Origin: Podarcis tiliguerta
Lineage: Eukaryota
Assembly (NCBI GenBank): GCA_965153285.1
Contig: OZ229110.1
Strand: one strand, 5' to 3'
Length of the DNA: 64,000 nucleotides
The translations under genes were made by a program, and so were the position numbers. The notes below the pieces were generated by a model. That model ran no database searches, was not told the origin of the DNA, and saw only the letters and a list, made by a program, of their open reading frames with translations. Shown in pieces: positions 1-44,534 of the stretch. Numbering within the stretch: position 1 is the first letter of the stretch; each line of letters starts with the position of its first letter.

Positions 1-1114
1 GAGGTTTAGGAGTACAGTGTGATTTCAGTTTCCTTTAAAACAAATGGTTATAGCTGAGATTTAGATTCAACAACATGCATAAAAGTTGTTATTTAGACCA
101 AATAGAGCATAGCAAGTTACCCAAGGCCACTAGAGCCAAAACATACAGTACGGGTTGTATGAATAATTCACGTGTGTTTATCCTATTCTTTCCACTTTTG
201 TATGTGATGAGCACCTTACGCTCTATAACATGGAGGAGGTTATGCTTTTTTTTTGTTTTGCTGAGTATTTGCCATGTATGCATGGATGGGAAGTCTCAAT
301 TGGATCCATGGAGGCGGAAAAGGTACATATGTAGTGTGCAAGGTAATAGGATATAGCAGAAATATCATGGGTACCTGCTAAATTAGTAGTGTAAGATGGT
401 CCTGAGATAGCTGGTGGAAGTTCTGGTGTCAACCTGCAACAAAAATCTTGCAAAACGTTTTAGGGTCCGTGTGTGTGTATAGAGGGAATGCTTTCTGCAG
501 GAGCTCTCGCAAAGTTGTCTACTGTTTCCTCAGTCCCTTCTCCCAAGCCAAGTTGTAGTTTTGGTTCCTCTTAGTATCCCACTCTTCCTTTGTTTCTGCT
601 TTGTCTCAGTCCCTTTTACTTATTAAAATCCACTGATGATATCTTCAGCAAATACAAAAAGGGGGGAATTAATTGAGAGAAACTTAGTAATACCCATTTT
701 AGAGGTTCTTGAGTCACAGTCAGATTGCTAGACTCAATGACCTCTCTTTTAAAGAAGTAAATCCATGTAATTTGTTCTGTATCAAAGAATATGTGCTATG
801 TATATTTTTTCTTTTGGAAGAATGATTGAACAGGGCCTCCAAATACCTGTTTTAAGTGGAAAGATTACATTAAAAAAAAAGAACATGGTACTTGTGTATG
901 AATTCCTCCCCCCGCCCAAAAAAGCCCCCACTTTCTGTCACCTTCTACATTTAGTGGTGGGAAATGGAAAGCTTTAAGTGAATAGAGGAGAGGAACCTCA
1001 GCAAGCTGGGATTGAATGTGCAATTGGTCGTGTATCTTGTTGTAACGGTTTGGGTGCTTCACATTGATTTCCTTTTACCCATTTGTGCTTTGTGGGATAT
1101 TGAACTCAAGGAAC

Positions 1115-1523
1115 ATGACAGAACGAAAGAGGAAGCCCAAGTTCTCCAGGGAGGAGCTGGACATTCTGGTCACGGAAGTGACTCGGAACGAAGCCAGGCT
1201 GTTTGGAAGGGAGACGATACGTCTATCCCACGCAGACAGGGACAAGATCTGGGAAAGTATAGCCAGGAAAATCACATCGGTGAGCCAGGTCCCCAGGTCT
1301 GTGAAAGATATTAAGCACAGGTGGGACGACATGAAGAGAAGGACCAAAGACAAACTGGCATACATGCAGAGGTCCCTCTCCAGTCCCAGCAGCCCGGGGA
1401 GGCCCTCGGCCATTGTCCTGACCGCCCACGAGAGAGCCATCGAGTCGACGCTGCATTCGTCACGCCAGATGCACGGCTTCCGGAGAGCGGATCTGGACGT
1501 GGTTGACAGCCCATCAACCAGCT
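1115..1523 (+). CDS. Myb/SANT-like (Myb_DNA-bind_5; MYPOP/NAIF1/TSNARE1-like, Harbinger-derived) protein, coding exon 1
   Basis: ATG at 1115. Translation KRKPKFSREELDILVTEV...LFG...RDKIWESIARKI...PRSVKDIKHRWDDMKRRTKDKLA follows the MYPOP/NAIF1 pattern (RKxxFSxxE..W..IA..R...KxRWxDxKRRTKxK). Donor T|GTAAGT at 1523/1524 (phase 1). Candidate acceptor AG at 1109-1110. Confidence 0.88.
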
Positions 1524-3595
1524 GTAAGTATTACCTCCCCCCGGTCCCCTGCTGAACAGATCAGTTCTGACCAAAGAACTGTATGTATTGCACGAAAGGT
1601 CAGCCCTGCCCTGCTAGCGAAACTGTTATCTCTGGTTGGCGTTTCCTGTTGCGCTTTGGTTCTCTCCACCCTATTTCCTCCCTCAGCCTTGGGTTAGGAA
1701 TAGATTGTAGGGACCTGCACCTTGAATGAACTGGCATGAGCTGTGCTACTTCGGTCAAGTTAGCAAAAAAGGGATAGGTATTGTCAGTGCCCATGGTCTG
1801 TGGAATGGCAAATGTGAAGATGCTTGGAAGGTTGTGTGCACACATTGACGGAGGGAAAGGGAAGACCAAACGTTTGAACCAAATCTTCATCCTTAATAAA
1901 TCCAATATATGGGTCACTAGATGAGTTCACAAGCTCATAAATGTGGATATTTCTACATTGCGCAAAGGTGGTAGTATGTGGAGTTGGCGTATCCATGGGC
2001 AATTTGAATGGGCAATGCCATTGATCTTTCCACCAATGTACCATGATCAAGGGATTGCCAAAACCAATCTTACAGCGTGCAAATGTGTGTACTTGAATCA
2101 TACAGTACTTCATCTCCTATCAAGAATTTCCACATTTGTGATTATGTGATCTAGCCCTGGCACTTGTATATACAAAATGGTGCTTGGGTTTTGTCCATTT
2201 TAACATCTTACCAGGTATTCGTGATATTCAGGACAGCCTTTACAAATGAGGGGTAACAACTATTTTTCATTGCTCTTGTGGAAACAAGAGATAGGCAGTA
2301 TGCTTCTGGCTTGCAGCTTTTGATCTAGTAGACTAAACCTGAAGAAAGTTCCGTAAGTGCATAGGCTGCACTTATCATCAAGGTCTTCTCTAGTTTTCCC
2401 TGTTCAACAGGCAGCACTACGGTTTAGGCTTATAAGGCTCAGCTAGCCATACCGCAAATATAATTAAGCAGTGGGAGAGGTCTATGACCCATTGCCTCAT
2501 GCTTAGTCTTAGACTGGACCACTAGCAGTTCTAAATGCTAGCCACTGCAACAGAAATTCTTGCCATAAAACATCCAATGAGATATGGCCAAACTCCTATT
2601 TGTTGGCTTTATTATTCTGTACTAGTGTTAAACTTCCTCTTCTGGATTATATTTGATAAAAAGGAAAAGCATGCAAAAACTGCACTAAATCACTTTTTAC
2701 AGTGGTGAAGCCTCTTGTCCCTGATAAGGAAGAGCTTTGGTGTGTGCAGAAACTGGAAATGTGGTGTTACCACTTGAGAGCTGCTTCCTGTAAACCAAGG
2801 GAATGGGTAGATGATATCAGTGTGGTGCCCTTCCAGATATTGCCCAAGCCAACATGGCCAATCCTAAGGGATGCTGGGAGTTGGAGTCTAGCAACATCTA
2901 GAAGGCATCACACTGATCTTTCCAGTATTGTCTTCTTCAGCTGCCATTGGCTTTCCAAGATTCTGACAGGGGTCTCCCCTTTCCTTGCCACTGAGATCCT
3001 TTATTGGATGGTAGCTGGGACCTTTTTGCAAGCTAGAACCCCCCCACTGAACTATGGACTGCTTTGGGTTTACTAGTCCCTTACAAATTGACAAAGATTA
3101 CTTAATGGTGGATGACTCCTCACAGGAAATGATTCTCTGCAATTGCTGCTGCTGAATGAAATGACTTTGGAAGCTCTTAATATAAAATCAGTATGTGATT
3201 AGATTGATAAAGCAACAGTCATGGTGGTGGTTGTGTACACTTGAAAGTCTACCATTAACTCTCCTCTTATCTCAGGATGTGCATAATTTCAGGTTTTTTG
3301 TTGGCATTTTGTGCCCCAAAGAAAAATCTATAGTTGGCCTTGCATCTAGTGACTTCAAAGCAGTCATCTTAGAGGGATGCTAAGCAAAATGCGTTTTGTA
3401 AATGGACATTTGCATTACACAAGAAATTCTTTTTAAAGGAATCAACGCCATAGTCTATTCCTTAAAAAAAATCTCTTTCTGCATTTTAGCAAAATTTCAA
3501 GTTGAGTGCTTGCTTCTCCTGAACTTATTGAAATAGAGATTTTCAGAAGAAAACATTCATGTAAATAATCTGGTGTTTTCTGTTTCTGTTTCAAG

Positions 3596-4167
3596 CTGAC
3601 GAAGATGTGGAGGTGCCTGGCCCCTCGCAGCAACACCACTTTTCATCACTGCAGAGGCACGCAGAAGAAGCTGACCTTCTCTCCATACCATCATACCTTC
3701 ATTCTTCTTCTCTGTCAGATCACTCGGATGTTATTAACCAAAGGCAGGAAATGAGGCAACCAAACCCATGTTCCCAGTCCTCTTTTAGGCCCCCTCGGCC
3801 CTATGCCCAAAGCCCACCCATCTCTGGTTTTGATCGCCAGCTCTTTGACACCCACATTGAACAGACGGAGCTCTTCAGGCAGTTCTGTCAAGAGCTGGTA
3901 ACAATCCACAGAGACATGGCAAATAACATGCTTGTGATCAGCCAGAGGATGTCTGACCTGACTGGGCAGGTCAGCCAGATGTGCCAGACCTTGACCAAAA
4001 TCAAGGACGAGCTTCAGACTTTGAACAAGGGTCAGGTTCCCAGCACTAGCCAGGTGGCAGCACCAGTGAACCCTTCTGAACCCAAGGCAGGGAATAGCCA
4101 AAGCCATCCCAAGCAGACGCCTCTTCCTCGGACGACTAGGTCACGGAAGAGAAAGCACCACTTCTAG
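3596..4167 (+). CDS. Myb/SANT-like protein, coding exon 2 (S/P/Q-rich linker, coiled coil, C-terminal basic RSRKRK)
   Basis: Acceptor tgttttctgtttctgtttcaag| ends at 3595. The phase-1 join T+CT gives S-DEDVEVPGPS, in frame with ORF 3607-4167. 409+572=981 nt, i.e. 326 aa plus stop. Heptad-like segment LFRQFCQELVTIHRDMANNM...LTKIKDELQTL. Confidence 0.82.
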
Positions 4168-5228
4168 CTCCCTTCGTATTAAACAGGAAAGAGTAGCTGA
4201 TGTTGGGTTAGGAAAAAAATTCATTAGCATGACTATTGGGGAAGATCAGTGAGAGTTCCCTATAAAGATGAATATAAATTATGACAGTTTAGCAGTAGGC
4301 TTTGCTCTGTGCACTTGGAAGCGCAGCACCTTGCTTGCCCGCCCTGTATTAGAAGCTGTGAACACCTTAAATACGCACAGGAGAAATTTAATGGCTGTCT
4401 TGCTCTATGGAGTCAAGGTGCACATAGATTTGTTTCCTTAACCTTTTATGCTCAGGAAACGTTACTTAGGCTTTGCATTTAAATAATTGCACTTAAGGTA
4501 AAACAATCCACAAATATATGCTCCCCCCGCCCCTTCTACTTCTGCAAATGCACTATGTGGATCTAAGAGCCGTAAACGGACTACATTCTTTGCCATAGTT
4601 AGCTATTGTGGTTTGGGTTTGAGTACTAAAGCTGGGTAGATACTGACAAAAGGAGGGATGTGGAAAAATAGGAAAAAACAATGCCTGCTTCTGAAGCGCG
4701 CAAAGCACCACCCAGCACACTGGACTTACTCATCAGCTTTTTCTGTCAGGTAGCAAAAGCAGTTATGGCAGGTGTCAGCCACTTCAGGCCTTTAAGAGGC
4801 GTTATCTAGCAGAAATTGGTAACATTGCAGTCCATAAAAACAAGTGCATTCTTTTGAAAGTAACTTGCACTGAAATCAGTTTGCTAAACCTGCTAGAAAC
4901 AAGTTTAGAATAAGGTAAACCATGGCCAGCCTGCTAATTTTTCTACCTGGTCATGCCAGACTACATCTTCAGTTCTTTAGGATATTAATAAGAGTAGTTC
5001 AGTAATCCCTCAGCTTAAATGGGGGTTACGTTCTGGAGATCGCACCTAAAGCCAAAATTGCATATAGGCAAAACACATTGGGTACAATGGCGTGTGGAAT
5101 TGCCAAAGCTTCTTTTCTTCTGGATGCCCATCCCCCTTTCCACCCATATATATGTCAAAGCTGAACGCACACAAGTTAAATGTGCGCAAGTTGTGGGCTT
5201 ACTGTACACCAAGCTGTACCTTTTTTTA

Positions 5229-5234
5229 AATAAA
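5229..5234 (+). terminator. Poly(A) signal of the nested Myb/SANT-like transcript
   Basis: AATAAA preceded by two TGTA motifs (about 5203-5218) and followed by a T-rich tract (ccttttttgttg, about 5250-5262), roughly 1.06 kb after the stop codon. Confidence 0.55.
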
Positions 5235-8200
5235 GAGCTCACAAATTTAACCTTTTTTGTTGAGGGATGGCATTTTCAGAAGCAACTAACTGGAGCATGC
5301 TCAAGTGCTGGCTTTGACACCAATGTAATTCTCCTGACATCTTCAGAATTGCTCTTTTGTTTGCAAACGCGACGCCGTCTTTTTAAGCCCCTTGTCTTAT
5401 CACAGGCTTGCTGGTGCGTGTTCTCCTTATACCAGCTTCCTGCTTAACAGGAGTGCTGTGCATGCATTCAAATGAACATGTAAGGGCTTAAACTGGTGCA
5501 GCAGGTGTTACCCACTCTCACCCGTCCCCCAGACTTCCCACATTGAATGGTTTCTGATCTTAGGGAGGTATGCAAGTGTGTCCAGCCAAATGCTCCCAAG
5601 TCTTCCTACCATACACAGGAAAGATGCGGAAGGAGATGCGCCTGGTACGCACAGGGTGGGTGCGGATGGCGTGTGCATGGTTGCTTGCCCAGTTTAAGCT
5701 CTCATACAATTCTTTTGAATCCAGGAATAGGGCAAACAGGAGATGCAAGCTACTGCCTATGTGAATCAAGATTACTGTCTACTTAGTTCTAAATGTAGTC
5801 TAGCCTGGCCTGTTAGGACTCCACTATGGTTCTGGAACTGGATGTTTGATCATATTCTCACACCTGCTATAGTACATAAGCTAAAATTGCATGTGCACTG
5901 TACACTTTTCATACCTGCACCTGCTCTTCTGCACCCTACGGATGAGATGTCAAGAGTTGAGACACAATCCCCTTATAAAGTCATAGCTGCAGTAGTCTAC
6001 ATTCCACAAGGCCCTTATGGCAGTGAGGATAAATTTAGGGTGCACACTTATCGGGGAAGGGAACCCTAATGAACTCAAGGAGACTTCCTTCTGTGTAAAC
6101 ACACATAAGATTGTGCTGTGAAGGTTAAAGCGTGTTGGGGCAGCTCCACCTCCACTTTCCCTGGGGCTACTTAAGGCCAGAGTTCCCTGAGAGGAGAAGG
6201 CCAGGCCAGGGTGTTGGTGCCACCAGCTCCTGAAGTAGACCTGAGATTAATTTGACCATTTGTTTTGTATTAATATTTTAACCCGCAAACCTCCTTGGAT
6301 GCCTTGATAGAAAGGCTTCATATAAATGCGATAAATAAATGATGAAAATATAATCAGACTGGTTTTTGAAAGCCTATTTCAGAGGAAACTTCACTTTTCT
6401 GCAGTGTTGCCACCTATTTGCAGGGAATTTAAAATCCATATGGCATTAAATGTGGATCACTTTTTTCGTGAATTAACAAAGTTCAGTATTTGTATACTTC
6501 TGAGGCAGGCATAGCACCAGTTCGTTGCAAATTAATGTGAAGGAAATAATGGCGCAGGGTCTGGAAGTGCCTGGTCCTCAGAGTTTCCACCACCGAAGTG
6601 GATGGGTTTAGCTCCCCCCCAAAGCAAGTCTAGATTGTAAGCTCCTTGGAGTAGAGACCTCTTTCTTTTGCTCTTCTTAACCCTATAAAGGACCATGTCC
6701 ATTGATGGCACTCTATAAATTAAATAATAGGAATGTCGTCTGTTACAAAACTCCTGGTGTCTCATATGTGCTTGTCTCCAAGCCATTAGGATGAATAAGG
6801 TTGCTTTGCTTTCCTGTTTCAAACTTTTGTGATGTGTTGTTGATTCAGCTATCAGTTCTTGGAGAACTGAGACAAAAAACAAGTTGGCATTCTCAGCCAC
6901 CGCTGACCTTTTCTGAGAAGCTCAGGTGCTTGTGGCCTCTGGATTTCTGGCACTTGGGAGAAATGTACACGCTGCGTGCTTTCTTTTAGAACAGGATAAG
7001 AAGCTGTTAAAGCTAAGCTTGAGGAATCTGGGATGTTAATATATAGAGAAACATATCTGGGCAAATGAAGGTATGCCCCATGATTTATTTATTTTCCATG
7101 GGGAATTAGCAACAAGGGATGAGTTCTTTGCTCTCTGAAATGCTTTCTTTGTGATCATCCCCACAAGGGGATGTTGTATGTGATTGTGTATACATGGCAT
7201 GTTTTAAAGTGCCCCTTGTTTGACTGAAATGCTGTGCTTGCCCTAATATTTCTTATATATGATGGAAATTTATGAGTATTTTTGTTAACAATAAATATAT
7301 AATACTTAAAACTCAAACTCTTTGTTGGGTAACGTCTTTCCTTCTCTACATGGGTGCTTTCAAGTTGTGTTCTGGAGCCTGTCTTCCATTTCAAGGACAT
7401 TTCAAGGATAGTTTACAGCTTACATATCTCTGTATGGTGCACAAATAGCACTTTCCTATCAGGACACATTTGTCAGATTGGGGTGGGTTTTATGTTTTTT
7501 GTTTTGCTATATTTTACGGTCAATTTGAGGACAAAAAGCATTTGCTCATCAAGAAGGAGCAAAAGATAGGTGAATGGTTTGGAAATGTTCCCAGTGTGAA
7601 AGTTTGTTCATGTGCCTAAAGATCTACAGAAAAAGCTACAAATCTGCCCATTTGCATTGTTATACAAAAAGCGACCTCAAAAATAGTGATGTTCCAGATT
7701 TCATCTGCCTCGTTTATTATTTTATTTATTTCATAAAAATTTATATACTGCTTGAGTTGTAGAAAACCTCAAAGTGGTTTACAAAACTGATGAGATTACT
7801 ACAACTTCTAGCACCATACAGCTTACCTGAAACAGCAATAAGGATTTCATGAGGATCTTGCAAAGATAGTTTGGAGATCTCAGCTGTCCATTTAGGTATA
7901 TCCAAGAGTTGAGCATCCATGCATGAAAATTTCTTACAGCTTTTTCAGAGACATCTTCTGAATCTCTAATTAGGTTCTGGGATTGCTTGTCACAGCTTGT
8001 CACAGCCTGTATAAAAGCACATATGCATACATAAAATGGTGACTCGTTCTTTCAAACAGATTACTACAACAGTTGCTTTGGGACAGGGAGACCCTTGGCC
8101 AGTGCTTTTTAGCTTTTCCAGTGCATCTGGAAAAGAAGTAGATGTTCATTTAACTGAATGGAATTGTTTAATTTAGGACTGATTCTGAGCTTTTCTTCCT

Positions 8201-10043
8201 TTAAAAAGAAAATACAGCAATCACCACCAGGAAAGAATAAACCCCTGGTCAGAGCAACTCCTGTGTCCAAATGTATGAGGAGTGCATCTGATTTCAGCAA
8301 ACCCATGAAAACTTAGTGCAACTGGGGGAAGGAGTGAATCTTGAGAGTCGCTGCTTAGCCGGAATGGCACCATCTTTCCCATCTCTGCCTTCCTCTTGGC
8401 TTAGCAAATCTAGGCAATGAGGCTGGGGTGGGGGGAGCTTAGTTACAAAGTCAAGCTGCTCTGTTCTTCTTGACTTAACCCACAGCAGTGATGGGGAATT
8501 TGCGGCTCTTCAGGTGACATTGGGCTCCCCATCATCCCCCTCCACCTTGGCTGATGGTCAGAGGTGATGGGGATTTGTAGTCCAAGAAGAGTTGGAGGGC
8601 CACAGCTTCCCCATCTCAGCCCTGCGGTGTCCAGATCCCTTGGCTTTGTGCATGTGTCTTCTCCCCAGTCACTCAACAATATCGATGGAAGCAGCCCCCT
8701 CTGTATATTGGATTGTGAAAGAAGTTGCCTGCACACTCATAGCATGTGTGTAATACATTGAGTTGTCAGTCGGTCAGCAGTAAACTAAAACCGAGGCAGA
8801 GAGGCGAAGGGCAGCTCACTCGTATCCGAGGGGTCTGGATCAGTGCTAAATACGCCAAGTTCTAAACAGCTTTTGTCCTGTCACTTATCTGCTACGCAGT
8901 AAACGAAGGTTTGGAGTCTAGTGTTCACCTGTCTCTTTTCTGACACTATGATTAATTATTTTGCAAAAGTGTAGTGCAGTGCAGTATGAGCATGACAGCC
9001 AAGTATGGTCATCGGACACATATTAGAAGGATATTAATGGAAGTGGCTGGTGTGGTATGCGGGGAAGAGCAGAAGCTGTTTCTGCTGTTAAAAGGGAGTA
9101 TTCCCAGGAGTAACTCTTATGCTAGCAGAAGTAATGCGGCATGACCTCTGCCCTCTCTCTTATTCAAACAGTGCCAGCTCCGCAATATAGATGCAATCCA
9201 CTAAGCACAGTTTGTGCACAATCATCAGTAACTCTCAATTAAATTTGAAACATGGCTCCCATGCAATTACTGGAAAAATACTCTTGCTCCAGCAACCTCT
9301 CTCTCTCACTCAGTACCAAGCCTAGGTTTTAGTAACGTACGTTTTTCATACTGTCTCTGCCCCTCACCTGATAACTTGCTTACTTTTATGCATGCAGATT
9401 ATCGAAATGTGCACACCAAGGATTAGTGTGACTAACTAGGTAAAGCTAATGTCTCAAGATGGCTAAGAGATGCAAGCAAGTTTGTTCTTGATTCAGATCC
9501 TCTCCCCCATGGACTCTTAAGGTTTCTTTAGGCAAGCCACTGTCTCTCAGCTGCTTCATCTGTAACATGGCAGCCAGTGGTTAAAGTGGTGGGCTTGGAT
9601 GGAGGACACTTGAGTTAAAATCCCTACTCTCCCATGTAGCTCACTGAGTGAAACTGGGCCTGTCGCTATCTTTCAGCCTAAACAACCTCAGTGTAGTTGT
9701 GAGCATAAATAGGAAGGAACTGTGTATGCCTTCTTGAGCTCCTTGTAGAATAGACAAGCAATAAATTCATTAAAACAAGGGAAAGCAAGACTGATAAACT
9801 TTACAGCGTTAATAAGAACTACCCCTTTGCCTGCCTCCAGAAAGAAATTGGCTTTGGGGGGGTCTGGAGAAATCCTGGAACAGCATATAGGGAAAGGAGA
9901 GGATAAATTGTTCCATCAGGCCAAGCAGAGATGCTTGCACTGATGGCATGATCCTCCTTGGCACTGCTTTGAATTCCACCCAATAACTTTGGAACACAAG
10001 TGCTATATAATAAGAACTTTCTGCATTTGCCAGATAAAGAGTA

Positions 10044-10269
10044 CAGTGGTACCTCAGGTTAAGTACTTAATTCGTTCCGGAGGTCTGTTCTTAACCTGAA
10101 ACTGTTCTTAACCCGAAGCACCACTTTAGCTAATGGGGCCTCCCGCTGCCGCTGCGCCACCAGAGCATGATTTCTGTTCTCATCCTGAAGCAAAGTTCTT
10201 AACCTGAAGCACTATTTCTGGGTTAGCGGAGTCTGTAACCTGAAGCGTATGTAACCTGAAGTACCACTG
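10044..10269 (+). mobile_element. Tc1/mariner (Tigger/pogo-like) MITE
   Basis: TA|CAGTGGTACCTC...GTACCACTG|TA terminal inverted repeats; homologous to the copies at 24077, 49797, 53479 and 62884. Confidence 0.88.
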
Positions 10270-11340
10270 TACTGCCTGCATGCTGTTTTGTAATATTTTC
10301 ACTGACAAATAAAATCCCTGCCATGGATTTTGGTGTTACCCTTGCGCTGTAACTTAGTGGCTTGGTGATGGTAGACAAATGGTTTTCTCATGAGGTTGCC
10401 AGAATGACACCCAACTTTGTGAGAGCCAGTTTTTGGTGTTTGCCTATTTTTTTGCGCTCATGACAGTGGCGATTGTGTGGTTGCCTGACAGCAGCCTTAT
10501 CCCTTGCAAGTCTTGACAGTAAGAAATCCGACCACCACCTTTGTCCCTTTCCACTTGGAAATCCTTCATTTCCAAACAGATAGAGATATGAAATTAGATC
10601 TGACATTGTTTTTATATCTTTTTTACTGTTGCTGTTTCTTATTGTTGTAGTGCTTTGGAATGATTTGTGGGAAGCGATTTGTCAATGATATCAATCAATC
10701 ACTGAGAAAAACTGACAGGGGGAGCTGAGGCTGGTGCAAAGTTTTCAGATGCTGAAATGCTTCTCGCTGAGCAGCTGCTATGTGGAGGGTGCTCAAAATG
10801 GCTTCTTTGCAGCAGCTTGTTCTGTATAGGCCCTTTACAAGAATTGGCTGCTGGCTACCAGAGTGGGAGTGAAGCTTGAGAAGCAGTGAGGTCCAAGGGC
10901 CCAGCATCTAAGGCCATTGTAAACACTTTACAAGCAGGCATGTGCTTTTTGGCTATTGAAGAGGAACCTGTGGCTCCCCAGGTGTGGGAATTCAACTCCC
11001 ATTATCCCTGACCATTGACCATGTTGGCCAAGGCTGCAGGGAGTTGCAGTGCAGCCACGTCAGGTGGGCTTCAGGTTCCTCGTCCCCGTTTTAAATGTGC
11101 TGACAACATTGGTGTTACTAGACAGAGGCAACAGCTATATACCAGATTCAAGAAGCTGTTTGATATTCCTTCGGTGTGCATGTTATTTCCTTGTAGCTTG
11201 TTGCATATCATTATTCATGCCATCCAATACTCCTCTGCCGGTGTCTCCCTTTTGAAGGTCACTCATGCTGCACTGTGGCTTCTGTATGTTTCCTTTCTGT
11301 CTAAGCCTCCTTGTAAGTCAAAAACTGTCCTTGTTCTCAG

Positions 11341-11528
11341 GTATGTGGCCATATCCCGGGAGGAGAGAGAACAGAACCTCATGGCGTTCCAGCACAGCGA
11401 GAGGATTTACTTCCGGACCTGCCGAGACATCCGGCCAGGGGAGAGGCTAAGGGTCTGGTACAGCGAGGATTATATGAAGCGATTGCACAGCATGTCTCAG
11501 GAGACCATCAACAGAAACCTCACAAGAG
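11341..11528 (+). CDS. PRDM11: PRDM11 internal exon: C-terminal part of the PR/SET domain
   Basis: Acceptor ttgttctcag| and donor G|GTGGGT; 188 nt. Encodes (R)[62 protein letters not shown], which closely matches recalled PRDM11. Confidence 0.95.
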
Positions 11529-14700: not shown

Positions 14701-15801
14701 AAGAATACAGTGTAATTTGAAAGGAAAAAAATCTGCCATGTCAAATCTGGACCTCCAGCCAGTTGTCATACCCTTAAAAACTAATTAGGCTGTGACATGG
14801 GCTCAGTCTTGCCTGGCTTCTTCATCTCTATAGCCAGACCCTAAGACTCGCGGCGTCAACAGATAAATGCTGATAATGAGGTGCCCATGCACCATCACAC
14901 TATCTGGAATTGTACTCACCTTCGTAGCAGCTTTAGACTTGCAGTTGTTCAGGACTTTGTTGCCAGCGTTCGAAATTTCTATATAGCTCTTACAAAAGCA
15001 CACACGTGTTTCAAAATGAAATATATATACATAGCAGCATAAAACAGCACCTTGTTTGGGAAGCAACCATGTGTCTTGATGCTTGGAGTTATTTGCAAGA
15101 TAAGAAGAAAGATGGAAATTGAACCAAACCCATCATCTTCTGAATTTCCAGGTAAGGATATATGGCTACTCCCTTTGTTTTAAGTAACTGCTAATATGCA
15201 CAATCTCTCCACTTTATTTTGGTGAACTTTGGCTAGGGGCCATACATTTAGCAATCTTGTCGGGACCAACCTTGGAGGTCACGCAGAAGTCCTACCTCAT
15301 TTTGCTAGTAAGTGATATGGGAAATGAGAGAGTGATTTCCTTGTGTTCTCACGCTTCCTGTCACTCTGGAATAGAAAAATGGTCCTTCAAGCCTACAGGT
15401 TTCACATGGAAATCTCTGCATCACACCCTTCATGTATTATTTGCCGGATACGTTTTACCAAGTAAAAGTTATCTTTTCAACAAACCAACACATTGAACAT
15501 TATTGTCTCATTCCAGCACAGGTTAGCTGCCTGTTATTTTAGACCACCTTCCTATAGTTTGTCTTCTCTTAAAACCATCTGAGGCCTACTTCTGTATGGC
15601 TGTCTCCTAGAGACTGTTTCCCCTTTTAAACAAATCTCCAGTCTTAGGTTTCCTGAGACCCTCATTCCAATAAGTTTCCTTATTGGTAATGCAAACATGT
15701 GAAAAATGAAGATTTGTGTGCTCCCAGTTTGCTTTTGCTTTGGGGTGAGGAATGTTGTGGAATTCTCACTGATAATTCCAACTCCGATTTTTTCTTTCTA
15801 G

Positions 15802-16437
15802 GAGATAAAAAATTACTAAGGGAAAGGTCAGAAAGAAATGTAGAAAACCAAGACGATATGAGCTACCCCCTCGAGCTCACCACGTCAAAGCAAGGGAAGA
15901 GTTCCTACAAGCGCAGCTTTGAAGAAGGTGTGTCTCAACCCCAAACGAAGAAGAAGAAAATAGACCTCATCTTCAAAGATGTTCTAGAGGCTTCTCTAGA
16001 GCCAACAAAGATGGAAGAGCACAAGGTGATAAAGAATTCTGCTCCTTCCACTAGAAAGTCCTCCAGATTTCAAGCGCGAGATGCCTCGGAAGGTTGTGGG
16101 CCTGGTATTCATCACAGCTCTCCAAATCACAGTAGAGGCAGGAATGAGGGTGAGTGGAAAGTCCCCCGCAGCTCTAAAGACATTGGCCTGCTGGAAGACG
16201 AAGGGGAAGAGGCCTTGTCATTTAAAGTGAACAGCCCCACCGATCTGTCTCTGGCATCGACTCAGGATGATGCCCTTGAGATCCCGACAACTTCATTGTG
16301 TCCCAACTGTGTACGGTTGAAGAAGAAGATTCGCGAGTTGCAGGCTGAACTAAACATGCTAAGATCTGGCAAGTTAGCCGAGGCACCTCTACTACCTCCT
16401 CAGGTACCTGAGTACCAAGCATTTTCATACCCCTCAG
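15802..16437 (+). CDS. PRDM11: PRDM11 penultimate exon (KKKKID basic motif; CPNC plus coiled coil)
   Basis: Acceptor tttctttctag| and donor G|GTAAGT, phase 1 at both ends. Contains KKKKIDLIFKDVLEASLE and PTTSLCPNCVRLKKKIRELQAEL, as in PRDM11. Confidence 0.93.
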
Positions 16438-17205
16438 GTAAGTTACACACAAGAAAAGTGTTCCTCAAACACTGTATAAGGAGTGCCATTTTGTTTGACA
16501 TTCGTGACTAAATATGTTCCAGCATTGAGTGTTCTGAGAAGCACCTGAGGTCTCGTTGGTGGGTTTCATGAAGCAGGAACGTAGTCCTCTGAGCAAGTGG
16601 TCTTGGGATTGTGACTGTAATGATGAAACATGATGTTTCTTTTCACTGTAATCAGGCACCTTCAATAAAAAAATTCCATTGCAGCGAATTTGTTTGCTGT
16701 ATTCTTGATGCATTCCCTTGCAGGAGAAAGAACAGCATATTGTTGTTTTTGAATCTTACCTAGAAATTGCAATTGACTCTCTTATGTTGAATATGAAATA
16801 TACTGGCTTGTGGCATGTGTGTGAAGTATGTCATTAATATTTTCCCTTTTTCTCTTATCTAAAGGATTTTGTTGGTTGAATGCAAGTGTGAAGCTCTTTT
16901 GATTTCATTTCGGGACATGCTCTGTCATTAATGCCCTTTTGTGAATATGAAAGTAGTCAGAATATCAGAGTGGCGTTTGCTACCCAGGCTTGCATGGACT
17001 CTTGGAAATTATGATTTTAGATAATGAGGGGGGCTCAGAATGTTTATAAACCAAAATTTACTCTAGTAACATGTTCATTTTTTGCTGCAAATGGCATGAG
17101 TAGCCAAGGGGGGCATGTGGGATAGTTGTCTAACAGTTTTGTGTTGTTTCTTGCAACCCTACCTTAAACCTTCTCCATTTCCCCCTCATTTCTTTTCTTT
17201 CGCAG

Positions 17206-19367
17206 CTTCGGAAAGCATCATGTCTGTTCCCACCATCATGGAGGACGACGACCAAGAGGTGGATTCAGCAGACGAATCTGTCTCCAATGACATGATAACA
17301 GCCACAGACGAGCCTTCCAAATTGTCCGCCGTCACCAGGAGGATTCGGCGCTTCAAGCAAGAGTGGCTCAAGAAGTTTTGGTTTCTGAGGTACTCCCCGA
17401 CGCTCAACGAAATGTGGTGCCACGTCTGCCGCCAGTATACAGTGCAATCCTCTCGGACTTCGGCTTTCATCATCGGCTCCAAGCAGTTCAAGATACACAC
17501 CATCAAACTTCACAGCCAGAGCAACCTCCACAAGAAGTGCCTGCAACTTTACAGGCTCAGGATGCACCCAGAGAAGACGGAAGAGATGTGCCGAAATATG
17601 ACTCTGCTCTTCAACACAGCCTACCATTTAGCGATGGAAGGCCGGCCCTATTGTGACTTCAGGCCGCTTGCGGAACTACTGAGAAAGTGCGAGCTCAAAG
17701 TGGTGGATCAGTATATGAACGAGGGAGACTGTCAAATCTTGATCCACCACATTGCGCGAGCTCTTAGAGAAGATCTCGTCGAACGGGTCAGGCAATCTCC
17801 CTTCCTCAGCATCATTTTGGACGGGCAGAGCGACGATTTGCTTGCTGACACGGTTGCGGTTTACGTGCAGTATATCAGCAGCGATGGGCCTCCGGCCACT
17901 GAATTCCTCTCTCTCCAGGAGCTGGGCTTTTCTGCAACCGACAGTTACATCCAAGCGTTAGATAGGGCTTTCTCTGCCCTGGGAATCCGCCTGCAGGATG
18001 AAAAGCCGAGTGTTGGTTTGGGAGTCGATGGTGCTAACATCACTGCCAGCCTTAGAGCTAACATGTACATGACAATCAGAAAGACTCTGCCTTGGCTGCT
18101 CTGTCTGCCCCTTATGGTACACAAGCCGCACTTGGAGATATTGGATGCGATTAGTGGGAAAGAGCTTCCTTGCCTGGAGGAGCTAGAGAACAATCTGAAG
18201 CAGTTACTCAGCTTTTACCGTTACTCTCCCAGGCTGATGTGCGAGCTGAGGGTCACTGCTGCTACTCTCTGTGAAGAAACTGAGTTTTTGGGAGACATCA
18301 GAGCAGTGAAGTGGATCATCGGGGAGCAGAATGTCCTCAACGCTCTGATCAAGGATTACTTGGAAGTGGTGGCCCATCTCAAAGATGTCAGCGGCCAAAC
18401 ACAAAGAGCAGATGCGTCTGCCATTGCCTTGGCTCTCCTGCAGTTCCTCATGGACTACCAGTCAATCAAGCTGATCTACTTCCTGCTGGACGTCATTGCT
18501 GTGCTTTCGCGCCTTGCCTTCGTCTTCCAAGGCGAATACCTCCTTGTGTCGCAGGTGGATGACAAAATCGAGGAAGCCATCCAAGAGATCAGCAGGCTCT
18601 CCGATTCTCCCGGCGAGTATCTCCAGGAGTTTGAGGAGAGCTTTCGAGAAAGCTTCAATGGCGTCGCTGTGAAAAACCTGCGGGTGGCGGAAGCCAAATT
18701 CCAGTCCATTCGAGAAAAGATATGCCAGAAGACCCAGGTGATTCTAGCTCAAAGGTTTGAACCTCGCAGCCGGGCATTTGTGAAAGCCTGCCAAGTGTTT
18801 GACCTCGCAGCTTGGCCGAGGAGCGCAGAGGAGCTGATGAGCTATGGCAGGGAAGACATGGTGCAGATTTTTGAGCACCTCGAAGCCGTGCCAACCTTTT
18901 CCACCGAAGTGAGCAGAGAAGGCATGGACCCCAGGGGGAGCTTGCTCATGGAATGGCGGGAACTCAAGGTGGATTATTATACCAAAAATGGTTTCAAAGA
19001 TTTAATCGGCCACATTTGTAAATACAGGCAGAGGTTTCCTCTTTTAAACAAAATCATCCAGATCCTCAAAGTTCTTCCCACCTCCACAGCCTGCTGCGAA
19101 AAGGGGCGCAATGCCCTGCAGAGAGTGCGCAAGAACAATCGTTCTCGGCTCACCCTGGAGCAGCTCAGTGACCTTTTGACAATTGCTGTTAATGGACCAC
19201 CTATTGCCAACTTCGAAGCCAAGAGGGCACTAGATAGTTGGTTTGAGGAGAAATCTAGCAATAGTTACGCACTGTCTGCAGAAATGCTGAGCAGGATGTC
19301 CTCCCTGGATCAGAAGCCAGTGCTGCAGAGCATGGACCACGGGTCAGAGTTTTACCCTGATATTTAG
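17206..19367 (+). CDS. PRDM11: PRDM11 last coding exon: TTF-type zinc finger plus domesticated hAT-family (ZNF862-like) transposase
   Basis: Acceptor tcttttctttcgcag|. Encodes ASES...RRFKQEWLKKFWFLRY...WCHVC...HSQSNLH (zinc finger), then IILDGQSD, GVDGAN and LPTSTACCEKG (hAT core and dimerisation region), ending EFYPDI* like the long PRDM11 isoform. Confidence 0.95.
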
Positions 19368-33882: not shown

Positions 33883-35026
33883 AGGTAAAAAGTTAAAGGT
33901 AAAGGACCCCTGGAAGGTCAAGTCCAGTCAAAGGCGACTATGGGGTTGCAGCGCTCATCTCGCTTTCAAGCCAAGGGACAGACAGCTTTCTGGGTCATGT
34001 GGCCAGCATAACTAAACCGCTTCTGGTGCAATGGAACACTGTGATGGAAGCCAGAGCACACAGAAGCACCGTTTACCTTCCCGCCTGGAGCGGTACTGTC
34101 AGAGCTGGCTCCTGGTCCCAGCTCACAGAGGACCAACGCTAGCCGGTAGTAATGTAACAAAGTCTTTATTGAAGTATAGTTTCCATTTCCAAGCCTCAGC
34201 GCCCCAGCTCTACGTCTAGTGTCTAGACCGGCGAAGCTCCATCTGAATCCCCGCCCCCTGTACACCAGTTTAAGACTCTAGCCTTACTCCACCTCTTCCG
34301 TCTCTCCTTTCTCCTCTGGGTCCTGCTACCCCCCGGGGTCCCTTCCTTCCTGGATTCCTCCGACGCAGACGTGGACCCCCCTGACTCCTCCCTCTCTCTT
34401 CGGCGGGCTTTAGGACCTGGCTCCCTATCCGGGCTGCCAACTGCTGCCCCCTCCTGTACATTTGAACTTGGCGCGCGCGCGCAGCCTTCCACCTTCCTCT
34501 CGGCCGTTTCCTCGCTCTCCGATGGAGGCGTGGCCACTCCTGCCTCATGTCCTCCCGCTGTCAGCGCGCTGCCTGATCCCGATGCCTGGGACTCCTCCCC
34601 TCTACTCCACTCTGGTGTGGACGCTGGTCCAGATTTCCAACTGCTGCTCTCTGAGTCCCCCCTGGCCCCTTCTTCCTGGGGTGTCCCCCTCGGCACCCCC
34701 CTTGCCCTGACCATGGGGGCCTCTTTCTGTGAATCTTCCGATTCACTGGAAAGACTCAGAGACCTCGGATTGCTGTCATCGCTGACATTTCCTTCGGACT
34801 CCTCCCCCTCGCTCTCTATTTCCTCCCTCTCCTGTGCCTCTGCTCCTGAACCCCTGACAGGTACCTATTTATCTACTTGCACTGGTGTGCTTCTGAACTG
34901 CTAGGTTGGCAGGAGCTGGGACACAGCAATAGGAGCTCACCCCGTTGCATGGATTTGAACCACTGACCTTCCGATCGGCAAGCCCAAGAGTCTCAGTGGT
35001 TTAGACCACAGCACCACCTGCATCCC
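33883..35026 (-). mobile_element. Sauria SINE interrupted by a solo LTR
   Basis: Reverse-complement homolog of 32373-32726. The two halves (33883-34096 and 34860-35026) rejoin at ggtac. Confidence 0.88.
34097..34859 (-). mobile_element. Solo LTR (763 bp; Gypsy- or ERV-like)
   Basis: TGTCAG...CTGACA termini, perfect 5-bp TSD GGTAC (34092-34096 and 34860-34864), AATAAA on the - strand at 34165-34170, CpG-rich. Confidence 0.88.
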
Positions 35027-37614
35027 TACCATGTCTGGTAGATACATTGGTAAGGCCATCTCCCCAAGAGAGTGTTGTCTGTCAGTGATAGTATCTGGAC
35101 TTAGTGCCGATTCAGAATTGTTGTGGAAGGCCTGTCTGCTATGTCTACATTGGTGTTTAGCTACTTATAGTGTCTACAGGCATAAGCAATGTGGTGCTCT
35201 CCAAATATTGTTGGGCTAACCATCTCTAACCATTGGCCTTTCTGGCTGGGACTGATGGGGTCCAATAATGGGGTCTGAAGGGCACCATGTTGGTTGACCG
35301 TGGTCTACAGAGTGCCTATATCCCCAGAGCCAGGTACAGTTCTGAAGCATGCATCTATGATCGTTTATCTTTAGATCTGCTTCTCACTCTTTGGCAGGTT
35401 CATCAGGAGACATCAGTATATAACATGACAAATAGCTTACAATGAGGCAGCTCCATCTGGTCCGAAAATACAGAAGAGAACTACAGTAATTGCCAGATTC
35501 CAACATCAACTTCTCTGCTGTTTATAGATGTGAAGGGGGTGGGGGAAGCCTGCCAGGAATATTGTTCTTTGTGGTTTGGCAACCTTCTTACGTGGGTGTC
35601 ACTAGTTATGTGCCTGTGGGTACATGTTTGGTCCAATTTCTTCCCCCTTCCCCACCACTGAAATTAATTTTGAAAGAAGCATTCTGCTGTAGCCAATAAA
35701 ATAAGTTGTGTTGTGTGTGTATGTGTGATGCTCATGGCAGTCTTATTGGTTTTCAAATGCTCCCATGGGCCCAAACAGGTTGGCAACCCACACTCTTAGA
35801 TGCCTTGACACCTACAATGTTTTAGGCTCAGAATGCCTTGATCAGGATTACAGTAATTCCAATCTTCAAATGTGGGTAAATGCGAGGGGCTTCATTTTTT
35901 CAATGTGTTGCATTATCACTGCAGTGATCTTGGATCATATAACTGGCTGATGCAGATAACTGTTCAGCCACTCACGGAAACAGTCTTTCTAAAGTATGAC
36001 TGATGCACTGTGGGCAGAGCTGGGAGGGCATCCAAATAAAAAGAACAACTCATTGATCCAACTTTTGTATTATTTATTTGTGGTTGAATGTTGTTGTTTG
36101 TGCAGTAAAATTAGACACCAAATCTCATGCTTTTATTTTGTACTTTGAACAGTGAATACGACAACAGCAAATATTTGTTTTTGTACAATAAAGATATTAA
36201 TCCACAGAGTTGGTCCACATGATCTTTCCTCTGAGCCTGGCTATGGCATTTTAATTTATTTGTCGTCGTCCCCTTCCTTTGAGATTTTATTACACAAGTG
36301 CTAAGGATTATGTGCTATTTACATCTAATTCTTCACACTGTGATGGAACAAGCTTTTGAATCTGACAGTGTGTGCCCCCAGAATTCTGAAAGTAGGTGTA
36401 TCCTGACACATCCCAGACAGATCTTCAAAAGTGCAGATCCAACAAGGCAAAGACATAGCACCTTGTTGCCCTTATAAAGGTGAGTTGGCTGGACTTGGTA
36501 AATCTGACTAAAGTGGCCTTTTTGGCATTGAATCTGCACAATGCACTTTTACAGATGGTAAATGAACTTCATGTACAGGACACTGAACAGCAAGGCATTA
36601 CATTACAAAGCAGAAATAAATACAAGTGAAACCAGCATTTTGAGGTGACCTGGCTAACAGAAAGTCACACCACAATGTTAATTACAATTCTCATTGCCAT
36701 CAATAATGGACAAGGCAGCTGGTTAATGTGGAAAGAAGTGCTCAGTCTGGCCAGTACCAGGGTACTGCAGATGCTGTGCTTGTCCAACAGGGTGAAATGA
36801 AGCATCCATTCGTTGACAGTCTTCCTGTAGCAGACTCAAGTGCTCTGGCAATCTTCAAACCAACTTGCAGTTAATGTTGTTAAAGACACCATACCTGTTC
36901 TCCTATGTGCTCACATCATTTGGCATAAGGGCCACAACTGGGTGAACCTTGTGCCTTTGTGCTTGAATTTGCACCCAATCTCAGCACTGTGCTCTCCCTG
37001 GCAATTGCCTGCATCCTCTCTGTGGCCCAGCTCTGTGGTTGTTGGACCCTTGCAAATAATACACGTGTGCTTTAGCTGCACCACCAGAAATCTCCAGTTG
37101 GGTCGTAGTGTTTCAAGTAGACTGGCAGTAAACCTCTCCGTGTACTTTTCAAATACTGGATGTGCTTACCCCTCAGCTGATATAATTCTATGCTGTTGGG
37201 TTCTAAAAAGTATTACAAAACTCACAAGGAAGCTACATCACAAGTAAAGATACTAGACTGGGTTCCTTGTCCTTGAATTGTGAGCCCTACAGACAGGAAA
37301 TAGCTCTCCACTGTTTTTCATTATCTTCATCTGACAATGTTCCACTTGTTGCCCCATACAGTGAATATGTACACCAAAATAAAGTTAAGTGGTGAAGCCA
37401 AGGTAGTTCAGGAATATTTGCTGATGTCCTTACTGGATCAGGCCTCCCTGCATGTCTCCTAAAAGGTAGTCTTTCTGTGAAGCTATGTCAACTCCCTGAT
37501 TGAGGGAGCTGCATGGGTTGACTTCAGGCCCCATCATTTCCTTCCTTGACCTCCTTTCCTCAAGAAATGATTTGCACCTTCAGAAGCAAACATGCCAATA
37601 ATCCGTCTGTCACA

Positions 37615-43796: not shown

Positions 43797-44104
43797 CTAC
43801 ATGTGTAGCTGGTGCCACATAGCAATCTGCCTTCTGGGGTTCCTCAGCATCTCTTCCCAGTGGTTCCTTTCTGTGCCGGTGGCATGCAGGCCAAGGCTGC
43901 ACTTCCCCAGTAAGCGGTTCTGCCCATCATCTCCATCCTGGCTTAGCATCTCCAGCTCCACACTGGAAGCACACAGCAGGTCGTGGGGCACCTCAAACAT
44001 GATCATTTCATTCCAGACAGGGTTGATCTTGTGCTTTGCACGCTTCGTCTGCTTCTTTTTCAGTTTCAGGGACTGGTGCTTCAGGGTCACCTTAACAGAT
44101 ATAT
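43797..44104 (-). CDS. SYT13: Synaptotagmin-13 last coding exon (C2B)
   Basis: Acceptor ctgcag|; encodes DISVKVTLKHQSLKLKKKQTKRAKHKINPVWNEMIMFE...HWEEMLRNPRRQIAMWHQLHM*. Confidence 0.96.
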
Positions 44105-44464
44105 CTGCAGGGACAGGGATATAGATATATATAAAAAAAGCGGTCATTTGATACCATTTCCTCCTAGCCTTCTAAAATATTATTGGTAAACTGCAGCAGT
44201 CATTGAGGGCCAAACTAGATGTGGCTGTGGTGGATGCTGGTTCTTTTCATGTGTCAACCCAATCCTTATATAAGGCAGGAGATGGGGGTCTTGCTTTAAC
44301 AGTAAAAGGAGACCAAGGAAATGCACTGCTGAGGTCCATCTCCATCCCATTCCTAGAAGGAGAGCCGGGAGCAGAGAAACCCTACTGAAACAACCAACTG
44401 TGGAAAGTTAACGGGTAGGAGAAGTTTCAGTGAGTGACTTTTATGTGTTCCTTTTTGTGTTAAG

Positions 44465-44466
44465 GT

Positions 44467-44534
<68 letters not shown>
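44465..44534. repeat. Compound (GT)n(GA)n microsatellite
   Basis: Read directly from the sequence. Confidence 0.95.

What the first reader, a model, noticed from the sequence alone, without database searches (positions are those of the whole stretch)
1111..5260. Intact Harbinger-type Myb/SANT gene nested, same strand, in the PRDM11 intron that splits the PR domain
Seen: two exons (1115-1523, 3596-4167) joined by a canonical phase-1 GT-AG intron give an uninterrupted 326-aa protein with a Myb/SANT-like domain, an S/P/Q linker, a coiled coil and RSRKRK, followed by a well-formed poly(A) site near 5229. I see no TIRs, TSD or partner transposase ORF around it. Known: this Myb domain type (MYPOP, NAIF1, TSNARE1) is related to the DNA-binding protein of PIF/Harbinger transposons. 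Inference: the next PRDM11 exon (11341) starts mid-PR-domain and no earlier PRDM11 exon is visible in 1-11340, so this is a domesticated gene inside a PRDM11 intron. I do not recognise it as any named gene.
Basis: partly seen in the sequence, partly recalled or inferred. Interest (0 to 1): 0.85.

Follow-up and report, generated by a model that had tools for sequence, protein, structure and literature searches.

The report
PRDM11's alternative Myb/coiled-coil exons
The two exons are real and intact, but they are already annotated: they encode the conserved transposon-derived Myb DNA-binding module filed either as an alternative end of PRDM11 (human "isoform 4", wall-lizard "isoform X3") or as a separate "MYPOP-like" gene.

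Summary
Exon 1115-1523, a GT-AG phase-1 intron and exon 3596-4167 give 326 codons containing Pfam Myb_DNA-bind_5 (E 4.5e-20), a long helix and RSRKRK.

The window's product is 100% (exon 1 piece) and 98% (exon 2) identical to RefSeq "PR domain-containing protein 11 isoform X3" of Podarcis muralis. The same module is curated as human PRDM11 isoform 4 and modelled in dozens of tetrapods, from frog to mammals.

- **Splice choice.** An acceptor at 1110|1111, four bases before the ATG, has the same phase as the PRDM11 acceptor at 11340|11341. The upstream PRDM11 exon can therefore join either the Myb exons or the rest of the PR domain.
- **Fusion product.** It keeps only positions 5-73 of the 123-position PR profile.
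- **Stand-alone form.** Transcript-like contigs and older "MYPOP-like" models in relatives begin inside the intron, so a stand-alone 326-aa protein is also plausible.
- **Transposon status.** No TIRs or transposase were found.
- **Earlier work.** Etchegaray et al. 2022 listed PRDM11 as putatively Harbinger-derived. This scan's note s1-827613, on the same stretch, proposed the splice switch.

The parts
1043..1110 (+). Sequence just upstream of the Myb exon. It holds an in-frame stop at 1043-1045, a pyrimidine-rich stretch and the AG acceptor at 1109-1110. Its translation (..GCFTLISFYPFVLCGILNSRN) is conserved in birds and mammals.
   Evidence: The junction R-N-M in P0438/P0237/P0046 fits (AG)|G AAC ATG.
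1111..1523 (+). Myb exon. As a PRDM11 exon it starts at 1111 in phase 2. A stand-alone ORF would start at ATG 1115. It encodes the Myb_DNA-bind_5 domain and an S/P-rich linker. The donor GTAAGT lies at 1524.
   Evidence: Region 1169-1522 is 100% identical to P0438 residues 197-314.
1524..3595 (+). Phase-1 GT-AG intron between the two module exons.
   Evidence: The junction STS|S|DEDVEV is present in all orthologous models and in short transcript-like contigs.
3596..4167 (+). Second module exon, coding part. It encodes an acidic/S-P-Q linker, a long conserved helix (FDRQLF..QQTELFRQFCQELVTIHRDMA..), a variable tail and the basic end TRSRKRKHHF. The stop is at 4165-4167.
   Evidence: It is 98% identical to P0438 residues 316-504. 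In the model, helix 392-458 has pLDDT about 80-91.
4168..5260 (+). Putative 3' UTR with two poly(A) signals, ATTAAA at 4178 and AATAAA at 5229. These are motifs only.
   Evidence: No read evidence was obtained.
4138..4145 (+). Candidate internal donor AG|GTCACG (cut 4139|4140, phase 2). It would join the module in frame to 11341. It is used in ab initio or homology models of other species only.
   Evidence: (..ARTTR|YV(I/V)ISREEREQ in alligator, cattle, turtle, pigeon and thrush models).
11341..11528 (+). PRDM11 exon encoding the C-terminal part of the PR domain ((R)[13 protein letters not shown]..). Its acceptor has the same phase as 1111.
   Evidence: Pfam PRDM2_PR profile positions 73-121 of 123, E 9.4e-20.
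15792..16439 (+). Downstream PRDM11 coding exon. Boundaries are approximate and come from tblastn.
17157..19367 (+). Large last PRDM11 coding exon, which is hAT-transposase-derived. The start is approximate.
   Evidence: Pfam zf-C17orf113 E 1.1e-8; Dimer_Tnp_hAT is weak at E 0.0034, below its cut-off.

Best explanation
Window 1111-5250 holds a two-exon, transposon-derived Myb/SANT-like module: a trihelix DNA-binding domain, a linker, a long helix and a basic nuclear-localisation-like end. It was fixed in the PRDM11 intron that splits the PR domain by the tetrapod ancestor at the latest.

It serves as an alternative 3'-terminal exon pair of PRDM11. The donor of the upstream PRDM11 exon (..NWM + AG) can join either of two acceptors.
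- Acceptor 1110|1111 gives R-NMTERKRK.., the stop at 4165 and polyadenylation at about 4200 or 5250. This is the Myb isoform, about 504 aa in the closest lizard.
- Acceptor 11340|11341 gives [12 protein letters not shown].., which completes the PR domain and continues into the hAT-derived C-terminus.

The Myb isoform keeps the Zn knuckle and about 60% of the PR domain. It gains a sequence-specific DNA-binding domain that the otherwise zinc-finger-less PRDM11 lacks.

The same exons are probably also transcribed from within the intron as a stand-alone 326-aa protein starting at ATG 1115.

Shown here: the exon structure, the phases, the domain content, identity to annotated isoforms, conservation, and the absence of transposon hallmarks. 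Inferred: use of either splice route in this species, DNA binding, oligomerisation through the helix, and nuclear import.
For: **Identity.** Window 1169-1522 and 3598-4164 are 100% and 98% identical to Podarcis muralis 'PRDM11 isoform X3' (P0438).

**Annotation elsewhere.** The same architecture (PF21549 + PF13873) is annotated as a PRDM11 isoform in lizards, tuatara, turtle, birds, echidna, koala, many placentals and a frog. It is curated as human isoform 4, NP_001371578.1.

**Phase.** (AG)|G AAC ATG at 1111 reproduces the R-N-M junction of these models. The acceptor at 11341 has the same phase.

**PR domain split.** PR profile positions 5-73 are in the Myb isoform, and positions 73-121 are in the exon at 11341.

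**Fusion transcripts.** Short Logan contigs carry uninterrupted PR+Myb ORFs, so they must be spliced RNA: P0274 (513 aa on 3488 nt), P0277 (513 aa on 1943 nt) and P0278.

**Stand-alone-type transcripts.** These are spliced between the module exons but retain the sequence upstream of the acceptor, or start at MTERK:
- P0006, 328 aa on 1443 nt.
- P0252, bird.
- P0275 and P0311, mammals.

**Conservation across 26 tetrapods**:

| Region | Mean pairwise identity |
|---|---|
| Myb | 0.93 |
| Helix | 0.65 |
| Basic end | 0.84 |
| Linker (exon 2 start) | 0.51 |
| Tail | 0.38 |

**Phylogeny.** The tree of modules follows the species tree, with the tetrapod clade at 95/98.

**Literature.** Etchegaray et al. 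2022 (PMC9392472) list PRDM11 among putative Harbinger Myb-derived human genes.
Against: - So neither the PRDM11-to-1111 junction, nor 1523-to-3596, nor the transcript ends are shown for this species.
- The upstream PRDM11 exons are outside the window and could not be seen.
- RefSeq 'X' isoforms are computed models.
- The three earlier lacertid models treated the locus as a separate 'LOW QUALITY PROTEIN: MYPOP-like' gene.
- The ATG at 1115 has an in-frame stop 24 codons upstream (1043-1045), which would suit an independent mRNA.
- The structure model is poor outside the helix, with mean pLDDT 46.9.
Confidence: 0.78

Rival explanations
1. A purely independent nested gene. Under it, its own promoter in the PRDM11 intron gives a 326-aa protein from ATG 1115 with its own poly(A) site, and the PRDM11 fusion models are annotation artefacts.
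For: - In-frame stop upstream at 1043-1045, with ATG 1115 the first in-frame ATG after it.
- Stand-alone-type transcript contigs in relatives: P0006, P0252, P0275.
- RefSeq and GenBank stand-alone models in gecko, Anolis, python, lacertids, many birds and wombat.
Against: - The acceptor at 1110|1111 is in phase with PRDM11.
- Spliced PR+Myb ORFs sit on short contigs in mammals.
- Human isoform 4 is curated.
- The ATG is not conserved: it is Val or Ile in Anolis and Val in placentals.
- There is no CpG-rich promoter signature in the 1.1 kb upstream, where CpG o/e is 0.0-0.35.
Confidence: 0.15
2. An in-frame cassette or alternative N-terminus of long PRDM11. Exons 1111-1523 and 3596-4139 (957 nt, 319 codons) would be spliced through the internal donor 4139|4140 to 11341. 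That would place the Myb domain and helix inside or in front of the PR domain of the long hAT-containing protein.
For: - The phases fit on both sides.
- Models with ..ARTTR|YV(I/V)ISREEREQ exist in alligator, cattle (Ensembl), green turtle, pigeon, thrush and starling.
- Songbird RefSeq X1/X2 models use another internal donor.
Against: - The AG|GT arises from the conserved codons Arg-Ser of TRSRKRK, so it may be a coincidence that gene predictors exploit.
- Most of these models are ab initio or homology based.
- No lacertid model uses this donor.
- No read evidence is available.
Confidence: 0.06
3. A recent or decaying PIF/Harbinger transposon copy whose Myb-like ORF happens to be intact.
For: Only the domain type. 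PF13873-type Myb domains are related to Harbinger Myb-like proteins (from literature).
Against: - No TIR candidates and no transposase ORF.
- Orthologs are at the same locus from frog to mammals, and their tree follows the species tree.
- The Myb domain is 85-93% identical between lizard and frog, echidna, owl or whale.
Confidence: 0.01

Closest known systems
PRDM11 Myb-containing isoform (human RefSeq isoform 4, NP_001371578.1 / UniProt H3BSZ2; Podarcis muralis isoform X3, XP_077785033.1)
   Same: - Same module sequence, 98-100% identical to the Podarcis model.
- Same exon junctions (R-NM.. and STS-S-DED..).
- Same position before the exon that completes the PR domain.
   Different: Nothing in the sequence differs. 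The upstream exons and the splice from them could not be seen in this window or in reads of this genome.
'Myb-related transcription factor, partner of profilin-like' LOC genes (e.g. Lacerta agilis XP_033005295.1, Vombatus XP_027693705.1, Anolis LOC134295447)
   Same: They are the same exons, annotated as a separate gene. The lacertid models are near-identical to the window.
   Different: The lacertid models are flagged LOW QUALITY. They extend the ORF upstream by hopping across three reading frames of the region 1017-1114, which in the window holds stops. The likely stand-alone start is ATG 1115.
MYPOP (p42POP)
   Same: Same architecture: N-terminal Myb_DNA-bind_5, a linker and a C-terminal helix opening with FDRQLL..QQT. 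It is 30% identical to elephant-shark MYPOP over about 290 residues, E 1e-25.
   Different: It is a paralog, not an ortholog. It falls outside the tetrapod PRDM11-linked clade, sits at a different locus and is not fused to a PR domain.
Harbinger-derived Myb-like genes (NAIF1, MSANTD1-4, TSNARE1; Etchegaray et al. 2022, PMC9392472)
   Same: A domesticated, conserved Myb/SANT trihelix protein at a fixed locus. PRDM11 is named in that paper as a further putative case.
   Different: Here the module is used as alternative exons of a host gene, as in TSNARE1. Similarity to actual Harbinger transposon proteins was not tested here.

Membership tests
Pfam PF13873 Myb_DNA-bind_5 | HMM match above the gathering score | tested here: met
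   71.8 bits against a cut-off of 21.7, E 4.5e-20, covering profile positions 1-77 of 78.
PRDM11 Myb isoform (human isoform 4 / lizard isoform X3) | Sequence of the C-terminal roughly 328 residues | tested here: met
   100% over 118 aa and 98% over 189 aa to P0438.
PRDM11 Myb isoform (human isoform 4 / lizard isoform X3) | Acceptor before the Myb exon in phase with the upstream PRDM11 donor | tested here: met
   ..tcaag|G AAC ATG at 1110|1111 gives R-N-M, as in P0438, P0237 and P0046. The phase is the same as at 11340|11341.
PRDM11 Myb isoform (human isoform 4 / lizard isoform X3) | PRDM11 N-terminal exons 5' on the same strand | not testable with these tools
   They are not in the window (tblastn). 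Their position is inferred from orthologous models only.
PRDM11 Myb isoform (human isoform 4 / lizard isoform X3) | Spliced RNA joining the PRDM11 exon to the Myb exon in this species | not tested
Such RNA was seen only as contigs from other species.
Active PIF/Harbinger transposon | Terminal inverted repeats and TSD flanking the unit | tested here: not met
   Only 3 chance 12-mer inverted matches between 1-1110 and 4168-11300, none flanking the unit.
Active PIF/Harbinger transposon | Partner DDE transposase ORF | tested here: not met
   No such ORF or Pfam hit in 1-11340.
Active PIF/Harbinger transposon | Multiple dispersed copies in the genome | not testable with these tools
   The genome of this species is not searchable here.
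Harbinger-derived domesticated Myb-like genes | [quoted passage not shown] | not tested
   No transposon protein library was at hand. This rests on Etchegaray et al. 2022, who give it as 'putative'.
Harbinger-derived domesticated Myb-like genes | Orthologs at a conserved locus under purifying selection | tested here: inconclusive
   The locus link to PRDM11 holds in dozens of species, and protein conservation is domain-specific. dN/dS was not computed because no orthologous DNA was available.
MYPOP orthologs | Groups with MYPOP in a tree | tested here: not met
   The tetrapod PRDM11-linked modules form their own clade at 95/98, and elephant-shark MYPOP lies outside it.

The most novel reading that the evidence does not exclude
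The same two exons work in two modes in this lizard. One mode is an autonomous 326-aa Myb protein made from a promoter inside the intron. The other is the alternative end of PRDM11, which replaces the last third of the PR domain and the hAT-derived tail with a DNA-binding domain.

One upstream exon would then choose between two different transposon-derived C-termini. The stand-alone protein could compete with, or pair through the helix with, the fusion isoform. Neither the function nor the DNA target of this isoform appears to have been studied in the papers I could search.
Probability: 0.45. Interest if true: 0.45.

Novelty: already known. Interest (0 to 1): 0.27.

Why it matters
PRDM11 is described as the only human PRDM protein without zinc fingers (PMC4009873). 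The Myb isoform gives it a candidate DNA-binding domain, captured from a transposon by alternative splicing, and that isoform is conserved from frog to mammals.

For this scan the value is mainly corrective. The 'unnamed nested gene' is an annotated PRDM11 isoform, also filed as a MYPOP-like LOC gene, and not a discovery. The biology of the isoform itself remains open: its DNA target, the role of a truncated PR domain, and the relation between the stand-alone and fused forms.

Tried and rejected

No read evidence was obtained. Afterwards I sent no window letters of 1127-1167 to any search tool and worked beside them (1169-1522; pieces 1-1126 and 1168-64000 in scripts).
- The runs found (organism A, guessed RNA) hold 0.30-0.37 of the sampled words. 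They were never laid, so they are not used as evidence.
So there was no DNA context of orthologs and no dN/dS.
- Complex prediction on two copies of the helix (P0438 residues 380-465) returned no verdict, score 0.12 against a mark of 0.32. This is evidence neither for nor against oligomerisation.
- The AlphaFold model of P0438 is poor (mean pLDDT 46.9). Only helix 392-458 is confident, so no fold search was run.
- The PDB sequence search found no relative; the best E was 0.59.

**Readings rejected**
- MSANTD5 was considered and dropped. That family is described as specific to certain placental mammals.
- An active Harbinger element was rejected.

- The joined 326-aa product of the window was never assembled or searched. 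Exons were searched apart by reference, and natural full-length orthologs (P0002, P0006, P0016, P0438) were used instead.
- Clusters that may stem from human material (P0011/P0023, P0374) were only listed by name. No human contig was fetched, saved or compared.
Full report
**1. Observation**

The sequence shows ATG at 1115, an exon ending at 1523 followed by GTAAGT, AG at 3594-3595, and a second exon from 3596 to the TAG at 4165-4167. That is 409 + 572 nt, or 326 codons plus the stop, with a phase-1 intron. The two pieces translate without stops.

The exon 1 product matches Pfam Myb_DNA-bind_5 at 71.8 bits (cut-off 21.7, E 4.5e-20). Exon 2 has no Pfam family, only weak coiled-coil-type hits. 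RSRKRK and AATAAA at 5229 are present. A second signal, ATTAAA, sits at 4178.

**2. What it is**

Searching exon 2 by reference found a gecko protein of 330 aa, a wombat 'MYPOP-like' protein of 321 aa, and many unnamed contig ORFs. Cluster look-ups and a search with the gecko protein then showed the same module in dozens of tetrapods under two names.
- **'PR domain-containing protein 11 isoform X3/X4/X5'**, about 504-530 aa, with Pfam PF21549 + PF13873. It is found in Varanus, Pogona, Salvator, tuatara, Pelodiscus, many birds, echidna, koala, many placentals and the frog Ascaphus. It includes the curated human 'isoform 4' (NP_001371578.1, UniProt H3BSZ2).
- **'Myb-related transcription factor, partner of profilin-like'** or 'uncharacterized LOC', about 321-363 aa.

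The Podarcis muralis model XP_077785033.1 (P0438, 'PRDM11 isoform X3', 504 aa) is 100% identical to window 1169-1522 and 98% identical to window 3598-4164. The window is therefore from a lacertid close to Podarcis. Its module is the one RefSeq now files under PRDM11. Earlier lacertid models were 'LOW QUALITY PROTEIN: MYPOP-like'.

**3. The splice architecture**

In all fusion models the junction reads ..(K/S)(A/S)NWM-R-N-M-(T/A)-ERKRK.
- In the window, ..tcaag|G AAC ATG ACA GAA CGA puts an AG acceptor at 1109-1110, four bases before the ATG. An upstream exon ending in two bases AG gives AGG (R), then N, M, T, E, R, exactly as modelled.
- The PRDM11 exon at 11341 has the same phase: cag|G TAT GTG GCC gives [12 protein letters not shown].
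- So one upstream donor can choose between two acceptors.
- Pfam places PR-domain profile positions 5-73 of 123 in the shared N-terminal part (P0438) and positions 73-121 in the exon at 11341-11528. The Myb isoform therefore carries a truncated PR domain.
- tblastn finds no trace of PRDM11 residues 1-185 in the window. It maps the downstream exons at 11341-11528, about 15792-16439 and about 17157-19367.
- That the N-terminal exons lie 5' of the window is inferred from orthologous models. The bat model P0032 joins ..KANWM to module exon 2, and the 504-516-aa isoforms join it to module exon 1. It could not be seen here.

**4. One transcript type or two**

Contig ORFs from public run assemblies fall into two classes.
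- **Fusion type.** Uninterrupted PR+Myb ORFs sit on contigs of 1.6-3.7 kb (P0274, P0277, P0278, P0307, P0308). These can only be spliced RNA, and they group with mammalian sequences.
- **Stand-alone type.** These ORFs are spliced between the two module exons but retain the genomic sequence upstream of the acceptor.
  - Placentals: MTVIYPIVLCGIFNPRNVAPLAERKRK (P0275, P0311).
  - Birds: MLISFYPIVLCGMFNSRNMAERKRK (P0252).
  - P0006 starts at MTERKRK: 328 aa on a 1443-nt contig, closest to squamate sequences.

Both classes therefore exist in relatives.

In the window the frame upstream of 1111 is closed by a stop at 1043-1045 and has no ATG before 1115. That ATG is not conserved: it is Val or Ile in Anolis and Val in placentals. 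This argues that the fusion route, or other upstream starts, matter elsewhere. The 1.1 kb upstream has no CpG-island character.

**5. A third route?**

The codons ACT AGG TCA of ..TTRS.. create AG|GT at 4139|4140 in phase 2. Exons 1111-1523 plus 3596-4139 (957 nt) could then be an in-frame cassette joined to 11341. Models with ..ARTTR|YV(I/V)ISREEREQ exist in alligator, cattle, green turtle, pigeon, thrush and starling. Songbird RefSeq models use another internal donor. Most of these are ab initio or homology models, and the GT follows from conserved coding sequence. I give this low weight.

**6. Not a live transposon**

- No flanking inverted repeats.
- No transposase ORF or domain in 1-11340.
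- Orthologs are tied to PRDM11 from frog to mammals.
- A maximum-likelihood tree puts the tetrapod modules in one clade (95/98) that follows the species tree. The nearest outside sequence is a coelacanth protein annotated as a LIN37 isoform. MYPOP, TSNARE1 and a bichir VRK3 isoform lie further out.

Mean pairwise identity across 26 tetrapod proteins is domain-specific:

| Region | Mean pairwise identity |
|---|---|
| Myb | 0.93 |
| Helix | 0.65 |
| Basic end | 0.84 |
| Linker (exon 2 start) | 0.51 |
| Tail | 0.38 |

This is the pattern of a protein under constraint. dN/dS itself could not be computed, because no orthologous DNA was available.

**7. How it probably works (inferred)**

- The trihelix Myb/SANT-like domain binds DNA.
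- The 67-residue helix (392-458 in P0438) is the only confidently modelled part (pLDDT about 80-91). It is homologous to the C-terminal helix of MYPOP: 30% identity over about 290 residues of elephant-shark MYPOP, E 1e-25. It probably mediates self-association or partner binding.
- TRSRKRKH is a likely nuclear localisation signal.
- A homodimer test gave no verdict and counts neither way.
- No solved structure is related by sequence.

**8. Comparison with the literature**

- Etchegaray et al. 2022 (PMC9392472) name PRDM11, with MYPOP, ZSCAN20 and TSNARE1, as further putative Harbinger Myb-derived human genes 'requiring further analysis'.
- A PRDM review states that PRDM11 is the only human PRDM protein without zinc fingers and lists no Myb isoform (PMC4009873).
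- I found no paper in the searchable library that studies the Myb isoform.
- MSANTD5 is a different, placental-specific family.
- This scan's note s1-827613, on the same stretch, proposed a splice switch between a Harbinger Myb and a hAT C-terminus. My evidence agrees, but only through orthologous models and splice phases, not through reads.

**9. Procedure notes**

- Exons were searched apart by reference, and natural orthologs were used for full-length work.
- Clusters that may be of human origin were only listed by name. No human contig was fetched or compared.
- There are no Ns in the window.

**10. Verdict**

The feature is real, intact and conserved, and it is already annotated. It is best described as the alternative Myb/coiled-coil terminal exons of PRDM11, which probably double as a stand-alone transcription unit. 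Novelty: already known. Interest is modest. It lies in the unstudied biology of the isoform, not in its existence.

Noticed in passing
window 1046-1110: The roughly 65 nt upstream of the acceptor translate, in the module's frame, to ..GCFTLISFYPFVLCGILNSRN. Nearly the same peptide is read from bird contigs (GCFVLISFYPIVLCGMFNSRN) and mammal contigs (VIYPIVLCGIFNPRN). Either the splice signals are strongly conserved, or this is an N-terminal extension of a stand-alone protein, which starts at an upstream ATG in birds and mammals but not here.
   Followed up: partly
window 17115-19367 (+): A 750-codon open exon forms the C-terminus of long PRDM11. It matches Pfam zf-C17orf113 (E 1.1e-8) and weakly Dimer_Tnp_hAT (E 0.0034, below cut-off). 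It is 92-94% identical to alligator and thrush PRDM11. PRDM11 therefore carries two different transposon-derived parts.
   Followed up: partly
window 43797-44147 and 54322-54786 (- strand): Two ORFs with C2 domains (E 9.8e-12 and 1.3e-7) lie on the opposite strand downstream of PRDM11. They fit a synaptotagmin-type gene. SYT13 is the human neighbour, from my own knowledge and not tested here.
   Followed up: partly
proteins P0047/P0207 (coelacanth), P0066 (bichir), P0064 (frog TSNARE1): The nearest relatives of the module outside tetrapods are annotated as alternative isoforms of unrelated host genes: LIN37, VRK3 and TSNARE1. This suggests repeated capture of the same Myb-plus-helix module by splicing, or repeated model fusions.
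   Followed up: no
window 1017-1046: A short upstream ORF, ATG TGC AAT TGG TCG TGT ATC TTG TTG TAA (MCNWSCILL*), matches the N-terminus of the 'LOW QUALITY' lacertid MYPOP-like models. Those models reach the Myb frame only by frame corrections, so their N-terminal 33 residues are probably artefacts.
   Followed up: partly
window about 44400-44500 and 34000-36000: There is a CT/CA dinucleotide repeat run, seen as SLSLSL..THTHTH in a minus-strand ORF. A locally GC-richer stretch (GC 0.51) at 34-36 kb has long overlapping ORFs on both strands and no Pfam match for the one ORF tested.
   Followed up: no
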